Source: Heteronotia binoei (taxonomy: Eukaryota). Taken from it: 63,601 nt of DNA. The DNA lies in the NCBI RefSeq assembly GCF_032191835.1, contig NC_083223.1, positions 806,001 through 869,601 of the forward strand. The letters are read 5' to 3'. The notes under the pieces are model-generated. The model did no database searches and had not been told where the DNA came from. It saw only the letters and a list, made by a program, of their open reading frames with translations. Below, in pieces: positions 48,041 through 63,441 of this stretch. Position numbers and translations under genes: made by a program. Within the stretch, counting starts at the first letter, position 1, and each line of letters starts with the position of its first letter.

Positions 48041-51000
48041 AGTGATTGTGCAGCCCAGCTCATCCAGAGGGGAGAAATATACTGAAATCTGTCAACAAAG
48101 AGCAGTAAGGTTGGATGTACGCACTTTTGTTTCAAAGGAGACCCTCCCCCCAGACATTGGACAATTTTTTAGTATTAATCAAAAGTATTACATTTTGATA
48201 GATTAGTGGTACCTTTAGAATTAACTGGAAATTTATAACTTCGGGGAAGTCAATATTGGAGGGAGGGGGGGGTGAAATATCATATGGTTTAGTATAAGAA
48301 AAGTTAATTAAATATTGTAACCATGTGTTATTAATAAATTGGTAAAACACAAAGGAGACCCTCCCCCCCCACCTCATAAAACCTTTCCTCCTTGAGGATT
48401 GAGGGGGGGGGGCTTTCCTGAGAATGTTGTCCTTCCCACCCTCCGCCCCCTCTGCTCGCCAGAAGAGCAATGGCCTAGAGATGCAAACACTTTCCCTCCT
48501 CTTCGTCTGAAATGTGTTCTGTCAGAAGGTCTCTTTGAGAGATCCAGACCTTGACAGAGGGTCCCCCAGATAGATCCAGACGGGTCGCCCTGTCCGCAGC
48601 CGTGCTGAAGCTGTGAGCCGCAACTCACAGAGACTCCTTCCCTGCCCCCCCCCCCCAGTTGGATCCATCTTGCGCTTTTCTGCCGCCCCCAGCCCGAATC
48701 GTTCCTTTCTGCAGCTGCTCGGGGAGAAAGTCACCGCTGGGAATCCGTGGGATCCCTCTGAAGATCCAGTGGAAGCTTTCAACAAATGCAATCAAAACGA
48801 AGAGATGTTGTAGCAAGAACAGTGATGAGCAGATCCCTCGTTCAAGTGAACCGAAACCGAAACCATGCATTCCCCCCAAATTGCATCTCCGCTTGATGCA
48901 GGTGAGGGAGAGCTCCAAAATGCGCGGAGGTGATCCTCTCTGTTTGATTCCCACCTGCCCCGCGAGAAGTCAAAGGGACCTGCGTCTCACTGCGTCAGCC
49001 CAAGGCCGCCGGAGAGATTCGACTGGAACCTGGGATTCGACAGTGGCCCCCTTCCTCCCCCCCACCCTTGTCTCTTGAAATCCTCACCGCATCCTTCACA
49101 CCGAGCCTGGCCTCTTGCCATTCCCTCAGACTAGTTTCCCATCCCAGATCTCTCTGACCCCAAACCCTAGCCACAAAAGAGCACAAAACCTGAGACTGAA
49201 ATGAATGTTCTTTGCCTTTAAGGTGCCACTCCTTTGACCCCCCCCTCCAATTTAGCACACTGCAGTCATTAGGGGGGGGGGATTTTGCTTGCAAAACACG
49301 CCTTTCATACTTTTCCGTGGGATCTTTTGTTTTGCATTCAAACGGCTTTTGGTTCACCTATCAGGTGAGAAGTTCCGTGTGTTTGGAGAGGCATACTCGC
49401 GGGGGGAAGCAAAACAGGCCTGCGTTTGGAAACGTGGGCTGCTTTCCCCGGTCGTCGGAAAGGTGCCTTTCGAGGCGGTTTCAGCGGGCCAGTTTTTCCT
49501 TTCAAATTTATATTTTCTTGACCGTGATTTAAACAAACAAAACAGGCGTTCGGTCAAGATCTCCGCGCTGCGCAGTCATTCAGGATTCATTTGCCTCCTT
49601 TGTTAGTTACTGTGGCGGCTAATTATAATCCAATGTATTTTGGGGGGCAGGAATCAATGAGTTGGAGGCTGCCCGCGCGCTTCTCTGCAGCCGCGGACTG
49701 CGGCACTTCCCCGTTGGCTTCTGGTGCAGAAAGAGGTCCGGGGCAGACGTTTCCTCTCCGGGGCCACCCGTTTGTTCGGCCCTCGCGCAAAGATTTTTAG
49801 TTCCACGACTGGGGGGGTCTGTGGGGGCTGGCAGTGCTGCGCAGAGGGATCCCCGAACGTCCCCCCCTTTTTTCAAAAGAGCGGCCGCCTCTGTATCAAC
49901 GCCGCCCCAATTCCAACCCGGGTTCCCCATCCGGATTTCACGGCCACGGAGTACAGTTTTTCCAACCAAGCTTTGAGGGCATCGTGTGGGCGAGAGGCTG
50001 CCATTGACAGAGACGACATTTTGCAGTGATCGACTTGGCGACGGTCACTGTTTTGCTCAAATCTACAGTGTCCCCCCCCCCCCTGCACCAAAACAGCGCG
50101 TCTGGCGCCGGAATGGCTGGGGGGTGGCTCGCTTGTGGACTGCGGGGTCCTCTCTCACGTCGCTCCGCAAGGCAGGGCCGCATGGGAAGCCAGAGCAATG
50201 CAGAGGGGTCGAGCGAAGACCCCCTTCGCCCTAAGCGAGCTGTAGGAATGCGGGTCCCCTTCGCGTTCTTGTCTGGCGGCCAGGGGGGCACCGAAGCGCG
50301 CAGCTTCTCTCCCCGCAGGATGTGGCTGAAGACCGGGGGAGGCGGGCGACATCCTCTTGGTGGGCCCAGCAGCTCCGCAGCAGCCGCCTTTCCCCAGCCG
50401 CTCGTTTGCCTGGCCTCCCAGTGCCTCCGGCCCGGGCCTTTGTCTCCAGGTTCCTGTGAGCCATCTGGGGGGGTGGGGGTGGGGGGGGGTGCTTCATTCC
50501 CTTCATTTGAAACTCCTTTTCTGCCCAGGCTACTTTCCTCGCGGAGGCTCGAGTCAAAGGATGCCAAAGGGCGCGCGGCGGGCGGCGGGCCCACGAAATG
50601 GCACCCTCTCCCCACGCCAAGGACCCGAGAAGCCAGCGCCGGTCCTGGCGGGCCTGCAGGTCGCGGGAAAGCGCGGCCTTTGTTTCACGGGGGCTCCCCC
50701 CAAATCCGGAATGCGGCTTCTCACACCCAAGCCTCAAATCCACGCCATTGACTGCGGACCCGGCCTCGTTTCCTCCTTGCAACCCAGCGCCTGAAAGACC
50801 GCAAGCGCGATTCTAGGCCGCAGAGAAGTGGAGATGCTCAGAACAGCTGGGAAGGGGTGTGTGTGTGTGTGTGCGTGTTGTGCGTGGGTGTGGATTCAAG
50901 TGTGTGCACTTAAGGGGGGGGGGTATCTACTGCGGGGGGAAGGGGGCTCAGACCCCTATTTGTTCCCGCCACCCGCGGGCTTCCCCCGGTTCCGCGCATC

Positions 51001-51724
51001 TTCGTCACGTGCCTTCGGGAATGGGTAGCAGAAGCTTGCTGTCCAGCCCCAAGAGCCAGGGGACGAGACGGGGGGGGGGTCAGGAGGGACACTGCAATGC
51101 TGCCCCCCCTGCCCCCGCCGCCGGCAGCCCAGCCTTTGCGAAGGGCGCGCCTTGGAGGAGCGCAGAGGGCCGCTTTCAGCCCCCCGCAGCCAGGAGCGGA
51201 TTGGGAAGGCTTTGGGGGGGGGGGGCGGGGGGGGTGGAGAAGCAGGAGCCCGGGGAAGAGCAGCCCTTCGCCTTCCTCCTCCTCCTCTTCCTCCTCCCGC
51301 CGAGAGGCGAGGCGAGGCGGGCTGCTGGATGGCGCGGAGGGGGCGGGCGGAGGTCGGAGGGGGAGGACGGCGCGGGAGCCGCCTCCGCCGGGCAGCTGCA
51401 GTCCCCCCTGGGCGAGCGGCGGTGCGGAGCTCCGACGGCTGCAGAGGCTGGACAGCTCCTGAGCGGCCCGGCTGGCTCCAGCGGCGTCAGTTCAGCGCCG
51501 GGACTCGGCGGACAGCTCCCTCCCCCGCCCCGCCCCGCCCCGCCCGGCTGCAGCGGGAGGGCAGAGCCGCGCGGGGACTTGGGGATCGGGCGCAGCGGCG
51601 GCGGCAGCGGCAGCAGCGCTCTGAGCGGCGCCGAGGGCAGCAAGACGGACGCGCGGCGGGGAGCAGCCTCCTCTCGGGGAACCTACTCGGCGGCGGCGGC
51701 GGAGGAGAAGGAGGCGAAGGAGGC

Positions 51725-51800
51725 ATGGGCCGGCTGCTGCTGCTGCCGCCGCCCCCGGGGCGCCGGGCCCGAGTCCCCGCAGGGCTGCTCCTTCTGCTCG
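51725..51800 (+). CDS. LAMP5: LAMP5 exon 1 coding part (signal peptide): [25 protein letters not shown](G)
   Basis: ATG in good context (ggcATGG), Leu-rich core, donor gtgagc, phase 1 matches exon 2. Confidence 0.8.
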
Positions 51801-52004
51801 GTGAGCGCTGCCTTCCCCGGACGGGGCTTTCTGCCCAGCCCCCCCTGCCCCTGTTTGGCGCAGCTGGGGAGCCGCTGGCTGCGAGGGCGGCGGGGGGGAG
51901 CGGACCGTGGAGAGGCTGGCCGGGGGGCCGGGCTGGGCGTCGGGGAAAGCCTTCCGCCCCCTGCCCAGCTCAGCCCAGCGGCGTGGTGCTTCTGCTCCCG
52001 GCAG

Positions 52005-52183
52005 GGGCGGCGCTGTCGGGGGGCGGCGCGGCGGCGCAAGAAGTGGAGAACCTGTCGGGCCTCTCGCCCAACCCGGAGAAGGTCATCTTCGCCGTGCGCC
52101 AGAACGAGACCACCTGCCTCATGGCCGAGTTCGCCGCCCGCTTCCTCGTCCCCTACGACGTCTGGGCCAGCAACTTCGTCGAC
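52005..52183 (+). CDS. LAMP5: LAMP5 exon 2: (G)[59 protein letters not shown]
   Basis: Close match to remembered LAMP5 [33 protein letters not shown]; acceptor ggcag, donor gtaagc. Confidence 0.96.
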
Positions 52184-53074
52184 GTAAGCGCCCCCCCTCC
52201 CCCGCCCCTCCGCTGCCTCCAACACCTGCCCCGCGCGGGGCTTTCTCCGGCGCCTCCACCGGCCCCTGGATCGCGCGCCCCCGACTCTGGGAAGGTCCAC
52301 AGAAGGCCCCAGGCCAGCGCAGCCTTCGCCGTCCCGTCGGCGCCCCGGGGCTCGCCTGCAAGATGCCCCCTCCGTCACCCCCTCCCATTCTCGGCTGCGG
52401 GTTGCCAGGCAATGCGTCGCCCCCCCCCCCCCGCACCGCCTCCCACCGGATCCGCACACCCGCAAGCACACCGAGGAAAAGGCTCCGCGCCCCCACCCGT
52501 CTTTGTGAGCCCCCCCGTCTGGTTTGCAAACCTCGGAGGCGGGCGGCTCCTGGGGGGGGGGGGTCGGGAGAGGCGAGTTTGCCCTTTCTCCTTCCGCCCC
52601 CCCCCCCCCGGTTGCAGAGCTTTGCTGGAGCGGCTCCCTTCCCCGAGGGGCTGCAAACTTCGCTTTTCCTTGGGAGGGGTTTTCCCCGTGGTCCCCCCCT
52701 CTCCGGCCTCCAAGCGTTTCTGTCCAGCGCCGGTCCCGGGCGGGTTGCGGGGAGGGGGAGGGCCGGGCTGGAGGACATCTGTAGGGCGGCTGTGGGGCTA
52801 AGCGGGGCGGGGGGGGCAACGCTCCCTCTAAGGCGTGGGGTCTTCTTGGGAGCAGGAAATCCCTCTCTTGCTGCTCGCTCCTGCAGCAGTTCCTTGGCCC
52901 CGGGGCCCGCCCTTCCTGAGCGAAGACCAAAGGTGGGTGCGGGAGGCTGAGGACCGGGGAGCGGGCTCACACGCCCTCCGCTGCTGCCCGGGGTGGCGGG
53001 GCGGGGGGACGGCCCTGGTGGGTCCTCCGAGGGAGACTGACGCCCCTTCCCGTCCCTCCCTCCCTGGCCGGCAG

Positions 53075-53206
53075 CTGATCACGGAGCAGGCGTCCATCCC
53101 GCTGTCCCGCGGCGCCGAGGAGCAGGGGCGGTGCGGCGCCAACGAGTCGGAGCTGCAGATCTCCTGGGCCCAGCGCGCCTTCTCCCTTCGCCTCTCCTTC
53201 GTCAAG
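53075..53206 (+). CDS. LAMP5: LAMP5 exon 3: [44 protein letters not shown]
   Basis: Matches LAMP5 LITEQADIALTRGAEVKGRCG; acceptor ggcag, donor gtaccc. Confidence 0.95.
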
Positions 53207-53458
53207 GTACCCCCCCGCCGCCCCCCGACGGGAGGGCGGGCGGGAGGAAGGCGGGAGGGCAGCGGGGGCCCCGGACGCCCACTGGGGGAGCCCTCCCAGG
53301 CCAGCAGGGGGAGGGGCAGCGGGGGCCCCGTCGAGGAAAACCAGGTCCCGCCGCCCCCTTCAAGCCCGGCCCCTGGGTAGGCAGAGAGAGGCCCCCACCC
53401 CCACCAGGCCGGTCTGGCTGACTGATCCCCTTTCTCCCCCACCCCACCCGATGGCCAG

Positions 53459-53564
53459 GAGGGGCGCAACAGCAGCCGGGGGGCGGAGGCCTGGTGGAAG
53501 ATGAACCGAGTCCAGTTCATCTACGACAGCTCCGAGCGCACCTACTTCAAGGACCCCGTCAACC
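53459..53564 (+). CDS. LAMP5: LAMP5 exon 4: EGRNSSRGAEAWWKMNRVQFIYDSSERTYFKDPVN
   Basis: Matches LAMP5 VQFVYDSSEKTHFKDAVS; acceptor gccag, donor gtgagt. Confidence 0.95.
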
Positions 53565-57267: not shown

Positions 57268-58148
57268 GGAAAAGGGAAGGTCCCCTGTGCAAGCACCAGT
57301 CATTTCCGACTCTGGGGTGACGCTGCTTTCACAACGTTTTCACGGCAGACTTTTGATGGGGTGGTTTGCCATTGCCTTCCCCAGTCATAAGAACATAAGA
57401 GAAGCCATGTTGGATAAGGCCAATGGCCCATCCAGTTCAACACTCTGTGTCACACAGTGGCCAAAAAATTTATATACACACTGTGGCTAATAGCCACTGA
57501 TGGACCTCTGCTCCATATTTTTATCTAACCCCCTCTTGAAGCTGGCTATGCTTGTAGCCGCCACCACCTCCTGTGGCAGTGAATTCCACATGTTAATCAC
57601 CCTTTGGGTGAAGAAGTACTTCCTTCTATTCGTTTAAACCTGACTGCTCAGCAATTTCATTGAATGCCCATGAGTTGTGAGAAAGGGAGAAAAGGACTTC
57701 TTTCTCTACCTTCTCCATCCCATGCAGAATCTTGTAAACCTCTATCATGTCACCCCGCAGTCGACGTTTCTCCAAGCTAAAGAGCCCCAAGCGTTTTAAC
57801 CTTTCTTCATAGGGAAAGTGTTCCAACCCTTTAATCATTCTAGTTGCCCTTTTCTGCACTTTTTCCAATGCTATAATATCCTTTTTGAGGTGCAGTGACC
57901 AGAATTGCACACAGTATTCCAAATGAGACCTCACCATCGATTTATACAGGGGCATTATGATACTGGCTGATTTGTTTTCAATTCATCTACACTTTCCCCC
58001 CAGCAAGCTGGGGATTCCTTTTACCGACCTCGGAAGGATGGAAGACTGAGTCAACCTCGAGCCGGCTACCTGAAAACGCAGCTTCCATCGGGGATCGAAT
58101 TCAGGTCGTGAGCAGAGCTTAGGACTGCAGGACTGCAGCTTTAACACT
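57268..58148 (-). mobile_element. Sauria-type SINE interrupted by a CR1 3' fragment (about 57389-57982)
   Basis: SINE sequence ccccagtcat|ctacactttcc is split; the insert encodes [19 protein letters not shown]...[16 protein letters not shown]. Confidence 0.87.
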
Positions 58149-58220
58149 TTGTTTGTCAGGACCCTAGCACAATTTGAGGGGACACAATTCCTCAGCCTCC
58201 TCCTCAGTTGATGCTGGACT

Positions 58221-58226
58221 TTTATT
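58221..58226 (-). terminator. AATAAA downstream of the repeat ORF
   Basis: tttatt on the + strand at 58221-58226; TTGTG elements follow on the minus strand. Confidence 0.5.
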
Positions 58227-58300
58227 GGGTGCAACTTCTCATTTCCTCCCTCCCCCCCCCTCCGGTTCTTCCGTAGCTACCTGTGCCTCCCTTTGCACCT

Positions 58301-61300
58301 TTAGGGCCTCTTGCTGAGCTCTTCCATTTTCTTTCTTCTGGCTGCCTCCAGCTCCTGCAGGGCTTCCCTCTGGGCCAGCTGGAGTTCTTCTTGGGCTCTC
58401 TCTGCCTCCTCCCTCTTTTCCATTGCGATCTTCTCCGCTCTTTCCTGCTCCTCTAACACTTTTCTTTGAAGTTGTGAAAGTTCTTTCACGGCAGTCTCAG
58501 CTCTTTCTCTTGCTTTCATTGCTTTGTTAGCCTTTTCCTGTTCTTCTAGGCACTTTTCCTGATCCTTTAAAAGTTCTTCCTGGGCCTTTTGAGCTTTCTC
58601 TTTTGCCACTCTCTTCTCAGCCCTTTCCTGTTCTTCCAGGACATTCCTATGGCTTATTGAAAGTTCTTCCGGGGCCACCTCAACTATATGCCTTTCTTTT
58701 AGTGCTGTCTCAGCCCTTTCTTGTTCTTCAAAGGCTGTTCTCCGAATCGTTATAAGTCCTTCCTGAGCTTTTGGAGCTCCCCCTCTTTCTTTCAGCGCTT
58801 TCAGCTCAAGCTTTTCTTGTTCTTCTAAGACCTTCCTTTCAGTTTTTGCAAGTTCTTCCAGTGCTGCCACAATCATCCTTCTTTCATGCACTGCTTTCTT
58901 CTCAGCCCTTTCCTGTTCTTCTAGGACCACCCTATGAATCTTTGAAAACTCTCCCAGGGCTGACTCAGCCATTTCTGGTTCTTGCATGGCTCTCTGGGCC
59001 TTCTCCTGTTCTTCAAGGACCTTTATCTGGATTTCTGAAAGTTCTTTCTTGGCTTTTTGAGCTCTCTGGACTTCACACATTGCTTTCTTAAAAGCCTCTT
59101 CTTGTTCATCTAGAATCCTTCTCTGAATCTTTGCAACTTCTTCCAGGCCTGCTTCAGCCATCTTTTGTTCCTCCTTTGCTTTCCGCTCAGCTTTTTCTTG
59201 TTCTTCCAGGACTTTCCCCTGACTCTTCGAAAGTTCTCTCAGGGCTGCCTCAACTACATGTTTTTCTTGTAGTGCTTTCTTAGCCAATTCTTGTTCTTCA
59301 AGGACTCTTCTGTGAATCTTTATAAGCTCTTCCTGGGCTTTTTGAGTTCTCTCTCTTTCTTTCAGTGCTCTCAGCTTGAGCTTTTCTTGTTCTTCTAAGA
59401 CCTTCCTATGAGCCCTTGAAAGCTCTTCCAGGGCTGCTTCAGTTGTCCTTCTTTCTTGCATGGCTTTCTTCTCAGCCCTTTCCTGTTCTTCAAGGACCTT
59501 TCTCTGAATTTCTAAGAGTTCTTCCTTGGCTTTTTGAGCTCTCTGGATTTCACACATTGCTTTCTTTTCTGCTTCTTCTTGTTCATGTAGGACCTTTCTC
59601 TGAATCTTCAAAAGTTCTTCCAGGTCTGCTTCAGCCATCTTTCGTTCCTCCTTTGCTTTCCTCTCAGCCTTTTCCTGTTCCTCAAGGACCTTCTGATGCT
59701 TCCTTGAAAGTTCTTCCATTGCTACCTTGGTTTCTTCTCGTTCTTGCAGGGCTTTCTTCTTAGCCCTTTCGTGTTCTTCTAAAACCATCCTATGAATCTT
59801 TGAAAGTTCTTGGAGGGCCAACTCAACCATTTCTCGTTCCTGCATGACTTTTTTTGCCTTTTCCTGTTCTTCAAAGACCTGTATTTGGATTTCTGAGAGT
59901 TCTTCCTTGGCTTTTTGAGCTCTCTGGATCTCATGCATTACTTTCTTTTCAGCTTCTTTGTGTTCATCCAGGATCTGTCTTTGGATCTTTACAAGTTCTT
60001 CCAGGTCTGCTTCAGCTAACTTTCTTTCCTCCTTCACTTTCATCTCAGCTTTCTCCTGTTCCTCAAGGACCTTCCTATGAGTCTTCGAAAGCTCTTCCAG
60101 GGCTGCCTCAGCTTCTGCTCGTTCTTGGGACGCCTTCTTGGCCTTTTCCTGTTCTTCAAGGACCTGTATCTGGATTTCTGAGAGTTCTTCCTTGGCTTTT
60201 TGAGCTCTCTGTATTTCACACATTGCTTTCTTTTCAGCTTCTTCTTGTTCATGTAGAACCTTCCTCTGAGTCTTTAAAAGTTCTTCTAGTTCTGCTTCAG
60301 CCATCTTTCTTTCCTCCTTTGCTTTCCTCTCAGCTTCTTCCTGTTCTTCTAGGATCTTCTGATGAGTCTTTGAAAGTTCTTCCAGGGCTGCCTTGGCCAC
60401 TTCTCTTTCTTGCATGGCTTTCTTGGCCTTTTCCTGTTCTTCAAGGACCTTTCTCTGGATTTTTAAGAGTTCTTCCTTGGCTTTCTGAGTTCTCTGGATT
60501 TCACACATTGCTTTCTTTTCAGCTTCTTTGTGTTCATCCAACATCTGTCTTTGAATCTTTGCAAATTCTTCTAGTTCTGCTTCAGCCATCTTTCTTTCCT
60601 CCTTCGCTTTCCTCTCAGCCCTTTCCTGTTCCTCTAGGACTTTCCTATGAGTCTTTGAAAGTTCTTCCAGGGCTGCCTCTAATTCTTGCTTGGTTTTCTT
60701 CTTAGCCCTTTCGTGTTCTTCTAAGACTACCCTATGAATCTTTGAAAGCTCTTCTAGGGTTGCTTCGGCCATTTCTCGTTCTTGGATTGCTTTCTTGGCC
60801 TTCTCCTGTTCTTCGAGGACCTTTACCTGGATTTCTGAGAGTTCTTCCTTGGCTTTTTGAGCTCTCTGGATCTCATGAGTTGCTTTCTTTTCAGCTTCTT
60901 TGTGTTTGTCCAGGATCTGTCTTTGAATCTTTGCAAGTTCTTCTAGGTCTGCTTCAACCATCTTTCTTTCCTCCATTGCTTTTCTCTCAGCCCTTTCCTG
61001 TTCCTCAAGGACCTTCCTATGAGTCTTTAAAAGTTCTTCCTCAAGGACCTTTCTCTGGATTTCTGAAAATTCTAAGAGCTTTCTCTGAATTTTTGCAAGT
61101 TCTTCCAGGTCTGCTTTAGCCATCTTTATTTCCTCCATAACTTTCCTCTCAGCGCTTTCTGGATCCTCTAGGACCTTCCTATGAATCTTTGAAAGTTCTT
61201 GCAGGGCCAACTCAGCCATTTCTCGATCTTTCATTGCTTCTTGGACCTTTTCCTGCTCTTCAAAGACCTTTATCTGGATTTCTGAGAGTTTTTCCTTGGC

Positions 61301-62356
61301 TTTTTGAGCTATCTCTATTTCACACATTGATTTATTTTCAGCTTTTTCTTGTTCATGTAGGATCTTCCTCTGAATCTTTAAAAGTTCTTCCAGGTCTGCT
61401 TCAGCCATCTTTCTTTCCTCCTTTGCTTTCCTCTCAGCCCTTTCCAGTTCCTCTAGGACCTTCCGGTGAGTCCTTGAAAGTTCTTCCAATGCCGTCTCGG
61501 CTTCTTCTCGTTCTTGCATGGCTTTCTTCTTAGCCCTTTCCTGTTCTTCTAGGAGTACACTATGAATCTTTGAAAGTTCTTCTAGGGCCAACTCAGCAAT
61601 TTCTTGTTCTTGCGTTGCTTCCTTGGCCTGTTTTTGTTCTTCAATGACCTTTGTCTGGATTTCTGAGAGTTCTTCCTTAGCTTTTTGAGCTCTCCCTCTT
61701 TCATTCAGCTCTTTCAGCTCAAAGTTTTCTTGTTCTTCTAAGACCTTCCTATGAGCCCTTGAAAGGTCTTCCAGGGCTGCCTCAGCCGTCCTTCTTTCTT
61801 GCATGGCTTTCTTCTCAGCCCTTTCCTGTTCTTCTACGACTATCCTATGAATCTTTGATAGCTCCCCCAGGGCTGCCTCAGCCACTTCTCTTTCTTGCCT
61901 GGCTTTCTTGGCCTTCTCTTGTTTTTCAAGAACCTTCATCTGGATTTCTGAGAGTTCTTCCCTACTTTTTTGAGCTCTCTGCATTTCATATGTTGCTTTC
62001 TTTTCAGCTTCCTCTTGTTCATCTAAGATCCTCCTCTGAATCTTTGCAACTTCTTGCAGGTCTGCTTCAGCCATCTTTTGTTCCTCCTCCATTTTCCTTT
62101 CATCCCTTTTCTGTTCCTCAAGGACCTTCCTATGCGTCTTTGAAAGTTCTTTCAGGGCTGCCTCGGCCATTTCTTGTTCTTGCGTGCCTCTCTTGGCCTT
62201 CTCCTGTTCAAGGACTTTTATCTGGATTTCTGAGAGTTTTTTCTTGGCTTTTTGAGCTCTCTGAACTTCACACATTGCTTTCTTAAAAGCCTCTTCTTGT
62301 TCATCCAGGATCCTTCTCTGAATCTTCAAAAGTTCTTCCAGGTCTGCTTCAGCCAT
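58301..62356 (-). CDS. Uncharacterised 1351-aa E/K/A/Q/R-rich tandem-repeat helical/coiled-coil protein, antisense to LAMP5
   Basis: 4056-nt ORF without a stop; ATG in strong context (aagATGG); 31-32-aa monomers; AATAAA 75 nt after TAA. No expression data and no family recognised. Confidence 0.7.
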   Translation of the reverse strand: MAEADLEELLKIQRRILDEQEEAFKKAMCEVQRAQKAKKKLSEIQIKVLEQEKAKRGTQEQEMAEAALKELSKTHRKVLEEQKRDERKMEEEQKMAEADLQEVAKIQRRILDEQEEAEKKATYEMQRAQKSREELSEIQMKVLEKQEKAKKARQEREVAEAALGELSKIHRIVVEEQERAEKKAMQERRTAEAALEDLSRAHRKVLEEQENFELKELNERGRAQKAKEELSEIQTKVIEEQKQAKEATQEQEIAELALEELSKIHSVLLEEQERAKKKAMQEREEAETALEELSRTHRKVLEELERAERKAKEERKMAEADLEELLKIQRKILHEQEKAENKSMCEIEIAQKAKEKLSEIQIKVFEEQEKVQEAMKDREMAELALQELSKIHRKVLEDPESAERKVMEEIKMAKADLEELAKIQRKLLEFSEIQRKVLEEELLKTHRKVLEEQERAERKAMEERKMVEADLEELAKIQRQILDKHKEAEKKATHEIQRAQKAKEELSEIQVKVLEEQEKAKKAIQEREMAEATLEELSKIHRVVLEEHERAKKKTKQELEAALEELSKTHRKVLEEQERAERKAKEERKMAEAELEEFAKIQRQMLDEHKEAEKKAMCEIQRTQKAKEELLKIQRKVLEEQEKAKKAMQEREVAKAALEELSKTHQKILEEQEEAERKAKEERKMAEAELEELLKTQRKVLHEQEEAEKKAMCEIQRAQKAKEELSEIQIQVLEEQEKAKKASQERAEAEAALEELSKTHRKVLEEQEKAEMKVKEERKLAEADLEELVKIQRQILDEHKEAEKKVMHEIQRAQKAKEELSEIQIQVFEEQEKAKKVMQEREMVELALQELSKIHRMVLEEHERAKKKALQEREETKVAMEELSRKHQKVLEEQEKAERKAKEERKMAEADLEELLKIQRKVLHEQEEAEKKAMCEIQRAQKAKEELLEIQRKVLEEQERAEKKAMQERRTTEAALEELSRAHRKVLEEQEKLKLRALKERERTQKAQEELIKIHRRVLEEQELAKKALQEKHVVEAALRELSKSQGKVLEEQEKAERKAKEEQKMAEAGLEEVAKIQRRILDEQEEAFKKAMCEVQRAQKAKKELSEIQIKVLEEQEKAQRAMQEPEMAESALGEFSKIHRVVLEEQERAEKKAVHERRMIVAALEELAKTERKVLEEQEKLELKALKERGGAPKAQEGLITIRRTAFEEQERAETALKERHIVEVAPEELSISHRNVLEEQERAEKRVAKEKAQKAQEELLKDQEKCLEEQEKANKAMKARERAETAVKELSQLQRKVLEEQERAEKIAMEKREEAERAQEELQLAQREALQELEAARRKKMEELSKRP

Positions 62357-62708
62357 CTTTTGTTCCTCCTTTGCTTTCCTCTCAGCACTTTCCTGTTCTT
62401 CCAGGACTTCCCTATGAGTCTTTGAAAGTTCTTTCTACCCTGGGGCTATATCCTTGTGTTGCTACATCTACTTTATGTACTATCCTATTGGCTTTCCTAT
62501 GAATCTGTGAAAGCTCTCCTAGGGCTCCCTGATAGAGAGATTATCAAAAACAAAGGGTAATTTTGTGATGTCATCAGTGACATCATTGCCAGGGTGGGGG
62601 ACAGGGTGAGTAGGTTAAAGGTCACCCACCCAACATATAATCCCAGGGGCTATCAGAGAGTTTGACTGCAGTACTGCAGCTTTACCACTCTGCACCACGG
62701 GACTCTTA

Positions 62709-63441
62709 GCCCTTCTCCAATCCTCTGGCATATCACCTGTGCACCAAGAGGCCTTGAAGATACTGGATAACAGCTCTGCCAATTCTCCAGATATTTGTTT
62801 AAGCACTCTTGGGCGTTTTCTGTGGCCCCAGAAGGTAGGACCAGAACGAATGGGTTGAAATTAAATCAGAAGAGTTTTCAACTTAATAGTAGGAAGAACT
62901 TCCTGACCATTAGAGCCGTTCCTCAGTGGAACAGTCTTCCTCCTTGGGAGGTGGTGGGCTCTCCTTCCTTGGAGGTTTTTAAACAGAGGCTAGATGGCCA
63001 TCTGACAGCAATGTGGATCCTGTGAATTTAGTGGGAGGTATTTGTGAGTTTAGAGCGGTTCCTCAGTGGAACAGTCTTCCTCCTTGGGAGGTGGTGGGCT
63101 CTCCTTCCTTGGAGGTTTTGAAACAGAGGCTAGATGGCCATCTGACAGCAGTGCTAATTCTGCAAATTAAGCAGATCATGATGAGAGGGAGGAGAAGAAA
63201 GGCTTCATCGGGGCTTAGTTCTTGTGGCCTTTTCTTACACACCCAGATAAATGCTGTTCAAGCAGCGATTCTTCTCCAGGCCAATTTGGCCAGGAATCCT
63301 GGAGGTTTTTTGCCATCTCCTTGGTGTGGGGCAGGGGTCCCTTGGTGTGTGCGTGTGTGTGTGGAAGGTGTTTGTGAATTTCCTGCATTGTTCAGGGGAC
63401 TAGACGACCCAAGAGATCCCTTCCAACTCTAGGATTCTATG
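62709..63441. mobile_element. Composite CR1 remnants: inverted RT fragment (62709-62809), then sense 3' end with a duplicated unit and tail
   Basis: Minus-strand ELAELLSSIFKASWCTGDMPEDWRRA; plus-strand FSVAPEGRTRTNGLKL...VVGSPSLEVFKQRLDGHL, repeated at about 63051-63150. Confidence 0.8.

What the first reader, a model, noticed from the sequence alone, without database searches (positions are those of the whole stretch)
58301..62356. Candidate novel nested antisense gene: 1351-aa repeat protein inside LAMP5
Seen: a 4056-nt ORF with no stop, although it is dominated by GAA/GAG/AAG/CAG codons that are one substitution from a stop and its monomers are substantially diverged. It has a strong-context ATG, no Trp that I could find, very few Pro or Gly, and AATAAA 75 nt after the stop. 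I know of no such gene at the mammalian PLCB4-LAMP5 locus, and it lacks the S100/EF-hand domain of trichohyalin-type proteins. Inference: a lineage-specific single-coding-exon gene under purifying selection, encoding a very long helical rod. Possible roles (untested) are epidermal scaffold, sperm structural protein or amphipathic lipid-binding helix.
Basis: partly seen in the sequence, partly recalled or inferred. Interest (0 to 1): 0.92.

Follow-up and report, generated by a model that had tools for sequence, protein, structure and literature searches.

The report
Truncated Hip-like repeat gene in LAMP5
The long open reading frame is real. It is not an orphan gene but a cut-down extra copy of an uncharacterised reptile/bird gene derived from the Hsp70 co-chaperone Hip (ST13), it keeps only the helical repeat rod, and its sequence changes suggest it is still kept as a protein, though expression could not be tested.

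Summary
**Observation confirmed.** Window 58301-62356 (-) is a 1351-codon ORF (1377 codons stop to stop). It consists of about 44 diverged 32-aa units, contains no Trp and has 5 Pro and 9 Gly. It lies antisense in a LAMP5 intron.

**It is not an orphan.**
- The same genome holds a 4134-codon single-exon paralogue on contig C159. That gene has a Hip/ST13-like N-terminus, three Hip-type TPR modules (PDB 4j8d, E 1.9e-52), about 100 of the same 32-aa units and a conserved C-terminal tail.
- Relatives with this architecture, all "uncharacterized", occur in Anolis and two birds. Pogona has a C-terminal fragment.

**The window copy is a truncated duplicate.**
- It shares a 114-bp 5' block with C159 that is found only at these two loci (89% identity).
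- It lacks the whole TPR half.
- A 10-nt deletion shifts the frame and ends the ORF early.
- The "strong" ATG is the Met that recurs in one unit type.

**The rod still looks selected.**
- Omega on private changes is about 0.4-0.6, the same as in the full-length paralogue.
- Stops: 0 seen against 14-29 expected.
- Pro: 2 seen against about 13 expected. Gly: 3 seen against about 28 expected.

**Best reading:** a rod-only paralogue that is probably still functional. Expression is untested, because no sequencing run was listed. This is a new variant of a known kind, of moderate interest.

The parts
58301..62356 (-). 1351-codon ORF from the first in-frame ATG to TAA. It encodes only 32-aa E/K/A/L/Q/R repeat units.
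58304..62434 (-). Full open frame from stop to stop (1377 codons). The in-frame TAG at 62435-62437 closes it upstream.
58421..62433 (-). Tandem array with a 96-nt period. Four unit types (A, B, C, D) form 285-nt (A-B-C) and 381-nt (A-B-C-D) higher-order repeats. The last roughly 235 codons are colinear with C159 codons 3776-4012.
62536..62648 (-). Unique 114-bp 5' block, 89% identical to C159:288934-289047, which lies 200-310 nt upstream of the C159 ATG. It is found nowhere else in the genome. It contains a conserved ATTATATG motif and TGATG/TGACA-type motifs. Candidate shared promoter or 5'UTR (inference).
62492..62525 (-). Decayed, out-of-frame remnant of a repeat unit (reads A-L-G-E-L-S-Q-I-H-R-K). 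It sits between the 5' block and the open array, at the junction left by loss of the TPR half.
58336..58339 (-). Site of a 10-nt deletion relative to C159. It shifts the frame and produces the stop 12 codons later.
58188..58300 (-). Former coding tail, homologous to about C159 codons 4019-4069 but out of frame. It has a further net -9 nt length change and a TGA in the parental frame.
62649..62716 (.). Young SINE fragment (96-98% identical to many genomic copies) abutting the 5' end of the duplicated segment. A CR1-type reverse-transcriptase fragment lies further upstream.
57386..58180 (.). SINE and CR1 fragments directly downstream of the point where homology to C159 ends. The last 65 codons of the parental tail, including its conserved end motif, are absent.
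52034..53560 (+). Host gene: three LAMP5-like coding exons on the opposite strand (about 52034-52189, 53075-53212, 53486-53560). The next exon lies beyond the window end, so the array sits in that intron.

Best explanation
The ORF is a truncated, rod-only paralogue of a Hip/ST13-derived gene family that is uncharacterised and, among the proteins found here, seen only in lizards and birds.

**The full-length gene.** It is a single exon. It has a Hip-like N-terminus, three Hip-type TPR modules (in Hip, this domain binds the Hsp70 ATPase domain), a rod of 32-aa charged units, and a conserved C-terminal tail. In this genome the full-length copy on contig C159 has expanded its rod to about 100 units (4134 codons).

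**How the window copy arose.** A DNA segment carrying the gene's 5' block, about 44 repeat units and part of the tail was duplicated into a LAMP5 intron. It lost the whole TPR-coding half. It later lost the conserved tail through a 10-nt frameshifting deletion, and SINE sequence now lies where homology to C159 ends.

**What remains.** The remaining 1351 codons encode a nearly continuous amphipathic alpha-helix with an apolar stripe of period about 3.53 residues, which is coiled-coil-like. The pattern of substitutions indicates it has been kept open and helical by purifying selection as strongly as the full-length paralogue.

**Most likely mechanism (inferred, not shown).** It is transcribed from the retained 5' block and translated from the first unit Met. 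It then acts as a long helical rod, either on its own or by pairing through the shared units with the full-length TPR-bearing paralogue. In the second case it would act as a TPR-less spacer or competitor in an Hsp70-tethering scaffold.
For: **Paralogy**
- An own-genome protein search finds the units only in the window and in a 4134-codon frame on C159.
- The last 235 codons are colinear with the C159 tail (84% nt identity).
- Homology continues out of frame past the stop.
- The 114-bp 5' block occurs only at these two loci.

**Family**
- C159 residues 465-616 match the Hip TPR domain, PDB 4j8d, at E 1.9e-52.
- C159 aligns with a Hip-family protein from Met1, and with three separate TPR modules (Pfam).
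- Proteins with the same architecture occur in Anolis (A0A803TUC8), Eudromia and Aegotheles. Pogona has a C-terminal fragment.

**Truncation**
- Pfam finds nothing in the window ORF.
- There is no TPR-coding sequence anywhere in C1:796001-889601, which reaches about 27 kb upstream of the ORF.

**Selection**
- Window units against their best C159 unit: omega 0.29.
- Private changes of window units: 82.5 synonymous and 131.5 non-synonymous. Omega is 0.41-0.63 for kappa 1-5, against 0.45-0.67 in C159.
- Stops expected at the synonymous rate: 14-29. Seen: 0 (P < 1e-6).
- Helix breakers: Pro 2 seen against 12.5-14.4 expected. Gly 3 seen against 27-28 expected. This depletion matches that in C159.
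- Window-window sister units: omega 0.25.
- Relative rate in the tail with Anolis as outgroup: 15 window-derived against 12 C159-derived changes.
- Every unit is at least 6% different in DNA from every other unit, so recent amplification cannot explain the open frame.
- The 5' block has 13 differences in 114 nt, against about 27% expected from dS 0.33 (P about 4e-5).

**Structure**
- AlphaFold2 folds 254 aa as two long helices (pLDDT 88), broken only at a window-specific Pro.
- The apolar periodicity peaks at 3.53 residues.
Against: - No transcription or translation evidence. Both run searches listed nothing.
- The exact protein is not in the 15-billion-protein collection.
- Both ends look eroded. 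There is an out-of-frame unit remnant at the 5' junction, and a frameshift with loss of the conserved tail at the 3' end.
- The window rod has 5 Pro in 1377 residues, against 0 in 3155 in the C159 rod (Fisher p = 0.0026). This points to some relaxation.
- Some private changes may predate the duplication, because orthology between repeat units cannot be established outside the tail.
- The former coding tail is no more diverged than the still-coding tail, so the frameshift could be recent.
- The homodimer prediction gave no verdict.
Confidence: 0.6

Rival explanations
1. It is a recently inactivated relic. The duplicate was functional for most of its history, perhaps as a fuller copy. It has only lately lost its TPR half and its tail, is no longer expressed or useful, and has not yet had time to pick up stops.
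For: - Both ends are eroded: a frameshifting 10-nt deletion, loss of the conserved end motif, and an out-of-frame remnant at the 5' junction.
- Neighbouring SINE fragments are young, 96-98% identical to other copies.
- Pro is in excess relative to the C159 rod.
- The ex-coding tail is not more diverged than the coding tail.
- No RNA evidence is available.
Against: - Stops, Pro and Gly together show no excess over the C159 baseline: 5 seen of about 57 expected under neutrality, against 7 of about 107 in C159. By my rough estimate this limits a fully neutral phase to about a tenth of the units' private history.
- Omega equals that of the full-length gene.
- The 5' block is better conserved than synonymous sites.
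Confidence: 0.28
2. It is one exon of a larger gene. Other exons, for example TPR-coding ones, would lie elsewhere and be spliced onto the array.
For: The parental family carries a large N-terminal half that is missing here. The open frame extends 78 nt upstream of the ATG.
Against: - An in-frame TAG at 62435-62437 closes the frame just upstream of the array.
- The family is single-exon in the bird locus and in C159.
- No TPR-coding sequence exists in C1:796001-889601.
- Own-genome searches find no further copy of the N-terminal half apart from ST13 itself and one retrocopy-like locus.
Confidence: 0.04
3. It is a non-coding minisatellite, or an assembly artefact, that merely happens to be open.
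For: - It is a tandem array with strong strand asymmetry. One antisense frame also has few stops (16).
- The paralogue sits on an unplaced 314-kb contig.
Against: - The other five frames have 16-104 stops against 0.
- Synonymous changes are in excess, and stops, Pro and Gly are depleted.
- Every length difference inside the array is a whole number of codons, which an open frame requires.
- The units are homologous to the coding repeats of proteins annotated in Anolis and birds.
- The window and C159 copies differ by 16-28% in DNA, so they are not one locus assembled twice.
Confidence: 0.03

Closest known systems
Uncharacterised lizard/bird Hip-like TPR-repeat proteins: Anolis carolinensis A0A803TUC8 / A0A803T9I5, Eudromia elegans KAM8810935.1, Aegotheles albertisi AAHN32_000658, Pogona vitticeps A0ABM5GQ97 (fragment), and the 4134-codon paralogue on contig C159 of this genome
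   Same: - The same 32-aa E/Q/K/A unit, with the same conserved positions (E1, L2, V9, L10, E12, Q13, E14, A16, K19, A20, E23, A27).
- A colinear tail and a shared 5' block with C159.
- Single-exon structure.
   Different: - The window copy lacks the Hip-like N-terminus, all three TPR modules and the conserved C-terminal end motif (V/I-L/W-D-F-F/L).
- Its rod (about 44 units) is about three times longer than in Anolis and the birds, but less than half the C159 rod.
Hip / ST13 (Hsc70-interacting protein; PDB 4j8d, 4j8f)
   Same: The parental family is derived from it. C159 is colinear with a Hip-family protein from Met1, and its TPR modules are 44-51% identical to it. In Hip a charged helix follows the TPR domain, which is a possible source of the repeat (my inference).
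   Different: The window ORF has no TPR domain, no dimerisation domain, no GGMP repeats and no STI1/DP domain (Pfam finds 0 hits). Nothing in it is known to bind Hsp70.
ST13 retrocopies with open frames (FAM10A4/FAM10A5 type; Monodelphis 'putative protein FAM10A4', and the intronless locus on C10 of this genome)
   Same: They are intronless derivatives of ST13 that keep open frames.
   Different: Those keep one TPR domain and the Hip C-terminal half. They have no 32-aa repeat rod.
Trichohyalin and other S100-fused-type, Glu/Lys/Arg/Gln-rich helical repeat proteins
   Same: Similar composition, long single coding exon, and a predicted continuous helix.
   Different: - No S100/EF-hand domain.
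- A different unit, 32 aa with a regular apolar stripe.
- No detectable sequence relation. Only 7 proteins in 1.84 billion reach E 0.001. The four best identified vertebrate ones (Anolis, two birds, Pogona) are Hip-like family members. The other three are weak, and none is named trichohyalin.

Membership tests
Hip/ST13 co-chaperone family | TPR domain of the Hip type, which binds the Hsp70 ATPase domain | tested here: not met
   Pfam finds 0 families in the window ORF. tblastn with the C159 N-terminal 700 aa finds nothing in C1:796001-889601. The paralogue on C159 does have it.
Hip/ST13 co-chaperone family | N-terminal dimerisation region and C-terminal STI1/DP domain | tested here: not met
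   No Pfam hit. The ORF consists of repeat units from its first to its last residue.
Lizard/bird Hip-like TPR x3 + 32-aa repeat family (uncharacterised) | Rod of 32-aa E/Q/K/A units with conserved positions | tested here: met
   phmmer hits Anolis at E 2e-23 and 7e-18, Eudromia at 3.9e-11 and Aegotheles at 1.7e-6. The position profile is the same as in C159.
Lizard/bird Hip-like TPR x3 + 32-aa repeat family (uncharacterised) | Three TPR modules and the N-terminal R-F-L-R-E-S-type motif | tested here: not met
   Absent from the window copy. Present in C159, Anolis and Eudromia.
Lizard/bird Hip-like TPR x3 + 32-aa repeat family (uncharacterised) | Conserved C-terminal tail ending in the V/I-L/W-D-F-F/L motif | tested here: not met
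   The frame is shifted by a 10-nt deletion, and homology stops at 58188, next to SINE sequence. The last 65 parental codons are missing.
Functional protein-coding gene (as opposed to pseudogene) | Purifying selection on the frame in its own lineage | tested here: met
   Omega 0.41-0.63. Stops 0 seen of 14-29 expected. Pro 2 of about 13 and Gly 3 of about 28. Sister units: omega 0.25. Caveat: part of the private changes may predate the duplication.
Functional protein-coding gene (as opposed to pseudogene) | Transcription and translation | not testable with these tools
   The look-up of sequencing runs listed no run for either query, so read laying could not be used.
Trichohyalin / S100-fused-type proteins | N-terminal S100 EF-hand pair | tested here: not met
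   No Pfam hit. None of the seven sequence relatives is named trichohyalin or S100-fused.
Coiled coil / single alpha-helix rod | Continuous helix with regular apolar or charge pattern | tested here: met
   AF2: helices 2-104 and 111-253, pLDDT 88. Apolar period 3.53 residues. LIVMF 22%, charged residues 48%.
Coiled coil / single alpha-helix rod | Self-association into a dimer | tested here: inconclusive
   Complex prediction gave no verdict.
Dispersed satellite | Many copies across the genome with no coding constraint | tested here: not met
   Only the window, C159 and one lone unit on C10 were found. Constraint is shown.

The most novel reading that the evidence does not exclude
The window ORF is a true young gene born by partial duplication. 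It would be a TPR-less, tail-less rod protein that co-assembles through the shared 32-aa units with the giant Hip-like paralogue. In doing so it would dilute or space that paralogue's Hsp70-binding TPR heads, as a built-in modulator of a multivalent chaperone scaffold specific to this lizard lineage.
Probability: 0.15. Interest if true: 0.6.

Novelty: new variant of a known kind. Interest (0 to 1): 0.45.

Why it matters
- **It turns an apparent orphan into a traceable case of gene birth by partial duplication.** A fragment of a chaperone-cofactor gene was stripped of its client-binding domain, inserted antisense into an intron of LAMP5, and still shows the same protein-level constraint as its parent.
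- **It exposes an uncharacterised gene family derived from Hip/ST13.** The family has three TPR modules and a 32-aa repeat rod. Here it was found only in lizards and birds.
- **It shows a lineage-specific expansion.** In this genome the family member on C159 has about 100 repeat units in one 12.4-kb exon. No protein of that family and size class was found in the searched collections.
- **If both proteins are made, they form a natural pair** (rod with heads, rod without heads) for asking what very long charged helices do in chaperone biology.

Tried and rejected
- **Sequencing runs:** The look-up of sequencing runs (kind rna on 58150-62700, kind any on 60300-62700) listed none. Expression could not be examined and read laying was never usable.
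- **Homodimer prediction:** Complex prediction on a 254-aa piece gave no verdict, with score 0.00 and chain pLDDT about 54. This is neither for nor against pairing.
- **Long relatives:** a search for relatives of 1833-5833 aa with the C159 N-terminal region found none.
- **Exact look-up:** the window protein is not in the collection.
- **Synteny test:** ORFs from the flanks of the bird locus L044 hit only CR1 reverse-transcriptase copies in C159 and C1. No LAMP5 exon lies within 10 kb of the bird gene. No contig is on record for the Anolis protein.
- **LAMP family scan:** the genome-wide PF01299 scan missed the window's LAMP exons. They had to be found by motif and then checked exon by exon.
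- **Protein atlas:** the look-up of a LAMP exon gave nothing usable.
- **5' block in the bird:** the 5' block is not alignable to the bird upstream region.
- **Literature:** two searches (ST13/retrogene/TPR, and Hip/ST13 with lizard terms) found nothing on this family.
- **Indel argument dropped:** I first counted three frameshifting indels in the ex-coding tail as a neutral yardstick. The last two sum to -9 nt in a G-rich stretch and may be one in-frame event, so I dropped that argument as statistically weak.
- **Rejected readings:** trichohyalin-type protein (no S100 domain), dispersed satellite, and exon of a larger gene (in-frame TAG upstream).

Full report
**1. The observation**

- The ORF listing reports a 1351-aa ORF at 58301..62356 on the minus strand.
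- Stop to stop, the frame is open for 1377 codons, 58304..62434.
- Tandem Repeats Finder sees a 96-nt period (62-63% matches) with 285- and 381-nt higher orders (69-88%).
- A unit HMM cuts the protein into about 44 units of 27-32 aa, in four recurring types arranged A-B-C(-D).
- Composition is E 24, K 15, A 12, L 10, Q 9, R 8%. There is no Trp, and there are 5 Pro and 9 Gly.
- 774 of 1377 codons are one step from a stop.
- The other five frames hold 16-104 stops, so the open frame is not a by-product of composition.

**2. The setting**

- The window is C1:806001-869601 of a 2.63-Gb genome.
- Plus-strand exons of a LAMP gene lie at about 52.0-52.2, 53.08-53.21 and 53.49-53.56 kb.
- Further exons lie at window-equivalent 68.5-68.7 and 74.8-74.9 kb, beyond the window end.
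- The 68.5-kb exon passes the Pfam PF01299 cut-off.
- The peptide motifs match my recollection of human LAMP5.
- It is embedded in SINE and CR1 fragments on both sides.

**3. It has a parent**

- A protein search of the same genome finds the units at one other place only. This is a 4134-codon open frame on the unplaced contig C159, 276419-288820, minus strand. One lone degenerate unit also lies on C10.
- The C159 frame starts with a Hip-like N-terminus, colinear with a Hip-family protein from Met1.
- It has three TPR modules (Pfam TPR_1 and relatives).
- The third module matches the solved TPR domain of Hsc70-interacting protein, 4j8d, at E 1.9e-52.
- About 100 of the same 32-aa units follow, and then a unique tail.

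**4. The family**

- Searches of 5.8 billion and 1.84 billion proteins return very few relatives.
- They are two Anolis carolinensis entries (1169 and 1262 aa), Eudromia elegans (1106 aa), Aegotheles albertisi (843 aa, low quality) and a 211-aa Pogona fragment. All are named "uncharacterized".
- Their sequences show the same order of parts: N-terminal motif, three Hip-type TPR modules, 350-450 aa of 32-aa units, and a tail ending in a V/I-L/W-D-F-F motif.
- The bird gene is essentially one exon and has no LAMP5 exon within 10 kb. The LAMP5 position is therefore probably derived.
- I infer that the family arose as an intronless derivative of ST13 in an ancestor of lizards and birds.
- No relative of 1833-5833 aa was found. 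Within what could be searched, the large rod on C159 is specific to this lineage.

**5. How the window copy relates to the parent**

- *5' side.* Window 62536-62648 is 89% identical to C159:288934-289047, which lies 200-310 nt upstream of the C159 ATG. The block occurs nowhere else in the genome, whereas the adjacent 68 nt are a common SINE.
- *Junction.* Between the block and the array lie a decayed out-of-frame unit remnant and about 60 nt of unrelated sequence. The roughly 2.5-kb TPR half is absent, and it is not found anywhere in C1:796001-889601.
- *3' side.* The last 235 codons are colinear with C159 codons 3776-4012. A 10-nt deletion at about 58337 then shifts the frame and creates the stop 12 codons later. 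Homology continues out of frame to 58188 and then ends next to SINE sequence. The last 65 parental codons, with the conserved end motif, are missing.
The ATG is the first of the Met codons that recur in the K-M-A-E-A motif of type-A units.
- *Conclusion.* The ORF is a duplicate truncated at both ends. It is neither a gene without ancestry nor a purpose-built transcription unit.

**6. Is it still under selection?**

- *Divergence is old.* In the uniquely alignable tail, dS is 0.33, dN 0.15 and omega 0.45. Every window unit differs by at least 6% in DNA from every other unit in either locus, so the frame was not reset by recent amplification or conversion.
- *Method.* For each unit I took as private those codon changes absent from its three nearest units.
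- *Private changes.* Window units have 82.5 synonymous and 131.5 non-synonymous changes. Omega is 0.41-0.63 for kappa 1-5. C159 units give 0.45-0.67.
- *Stops.* If all sites had changed at the synonymous rate, 14-29 stop codons would be expected in the 1109 scored codons. None is seen (P < 1e-6).
- *Helix breakers.* They are depleted to the same degree as in C159:

| Change | Window seen / expected | C159 seen / expected |
|---|---|---|
| Pro | 2 / 12.5-14.4 | 0 / 24-28 |
| Gly | 3 / 27-28 | 7 / 51-52 |

- *Sister units.* Four window-window sister pairs, which most likely diverged inside this locus, give omega 0.25.
- *Relative rate.* With Anolis as outgroup, the tail shows no acceleration: 15 window-derived against 12 C159-derived changes.
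- *Length differences.* Within the array they are all whole codons, as an open frame requires.
- *5' block.* It has 13 differences in 114 nt, against about 27% expected from dS (P about 4e-5). This suggests it is itself constrained.

**7. Points against a living gene**

- No RNA or protein evidence could be obtained.
- Both ends are eroded.
- The whole window rod has 5 Pro, against none in the 3155-residue C159 rod (p = 0.0026).
- The ex-coding tail is no more diverged than the coding tail, so the frameshift may be recent.
- Unit orthology outside the tail cannot be established, so some private changes may predate the duplication.
- My estimate, which is an inference: because stops, Pro and Gly together show no excess over the C159 baseline, any fully neutral phase covers at most about a tenth of the units' private history.

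**8. Structure and likely mechanism**

- AlphaFold2 folds two higher-order repeats (254 aa) as helices 2-104 and 111-253 with pLDDT 88. The only break is at a window-specific Pro.
- Conserved apolar positions (2, 5, 9, 10, 16, 20, 21, 27, 30, 31) give nine stripe positions per 32 residues. The measured periodicity peaks at 3.53 residues, which is nearer to a coiled coil than to a straight amphipathic helix. Large apolar residues make up 22% and charged residues 48%.
- The dimer prediction gave no verdict.
- I therefore read the product as a long helical rod, probably able to pair with like rods. Since the full-length paralogue carries the same units, hetero-pairing is the most specific hypothesis for a function. 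This is inferred, not shown.

**9. Comparison and verdict**

- The ORF works like a charged helical rod, as in trichohyalin-like or coiled-coil proteins.
- By descent it belongs to the Hip/ST13-derived lizard/bird family.
- By domain content it fails the tests that define Hip, since it has no TPR, no dimerisation domain and no STI1 domain. It also fails two of the three features of its own family.
- It is best filed as a new variant: a truncated, rod-only paralogue.
- Confidence that it is a truncated paralogue of the C159 gene is very high.
- My probabilities are about 0.6 that it is still a functional gene, about 0.28 that it is a recently dead relic, and under 0.1 for a larger spliced gene or an artefact.
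- Another agent's note in this scan (s1-328419) names the genome as the gecko Heteronotia binoei. I did not verify this.

Noticed in passing
G000:C159:276419-288820 (-) (loci L027, L029, L028, L030, L045): A 4134-codon single-exon open frame. It has a Hip-like N-terminus, three Hip-type TPR modules, about 100 units of 32 aa and a conserved tail. It is about three times longer than its Anolis and bird relatives and sits on an unplaced 314-kb contig. It deserves its own follow-up.
   Followed up: partly
G000:C10:101019528-101020013 (-) (L035): An intronless Hip-like open frame (about 330 aa) with a Hip-type N-terminus and a single TPR domain. It is probably an ST13 retrocopy. ST13 itself matches exon by exon on C8 near 80.87 Mb.
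   Followed up: partly
G000:C10:85718867-85718962 (L026:1496-1582): A single degenerate 32-aa unit of the same repeat, far from both arrays. It may be a relic of a third copy.
   Followed up: partly
L044:9700-10000 (Aegotheles albertisi CM078460.1): By eye, the sequence upstream of the annotated start of the bird homologue seemed to hold remnants of a first TPR module broken by stops. I did not translate or test this. It would fit the 'low quality protein' label.
   Followed up: no
window 59854-60705 and 61759-62286 (+): Two TTG-start ORFs of 283 and 175 aa on the strand opposite the array. They lie in the antisense frame that has only 16 stops and are by-products of the pyrimidine-rich complement, not genes.
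   Followed up: partly
window 50800-53100: A GC-rich, CpG-island-like stretch around the first LAMP5 coding exon. It contains many long spurious ORFs on both strands.
   Followed up: no
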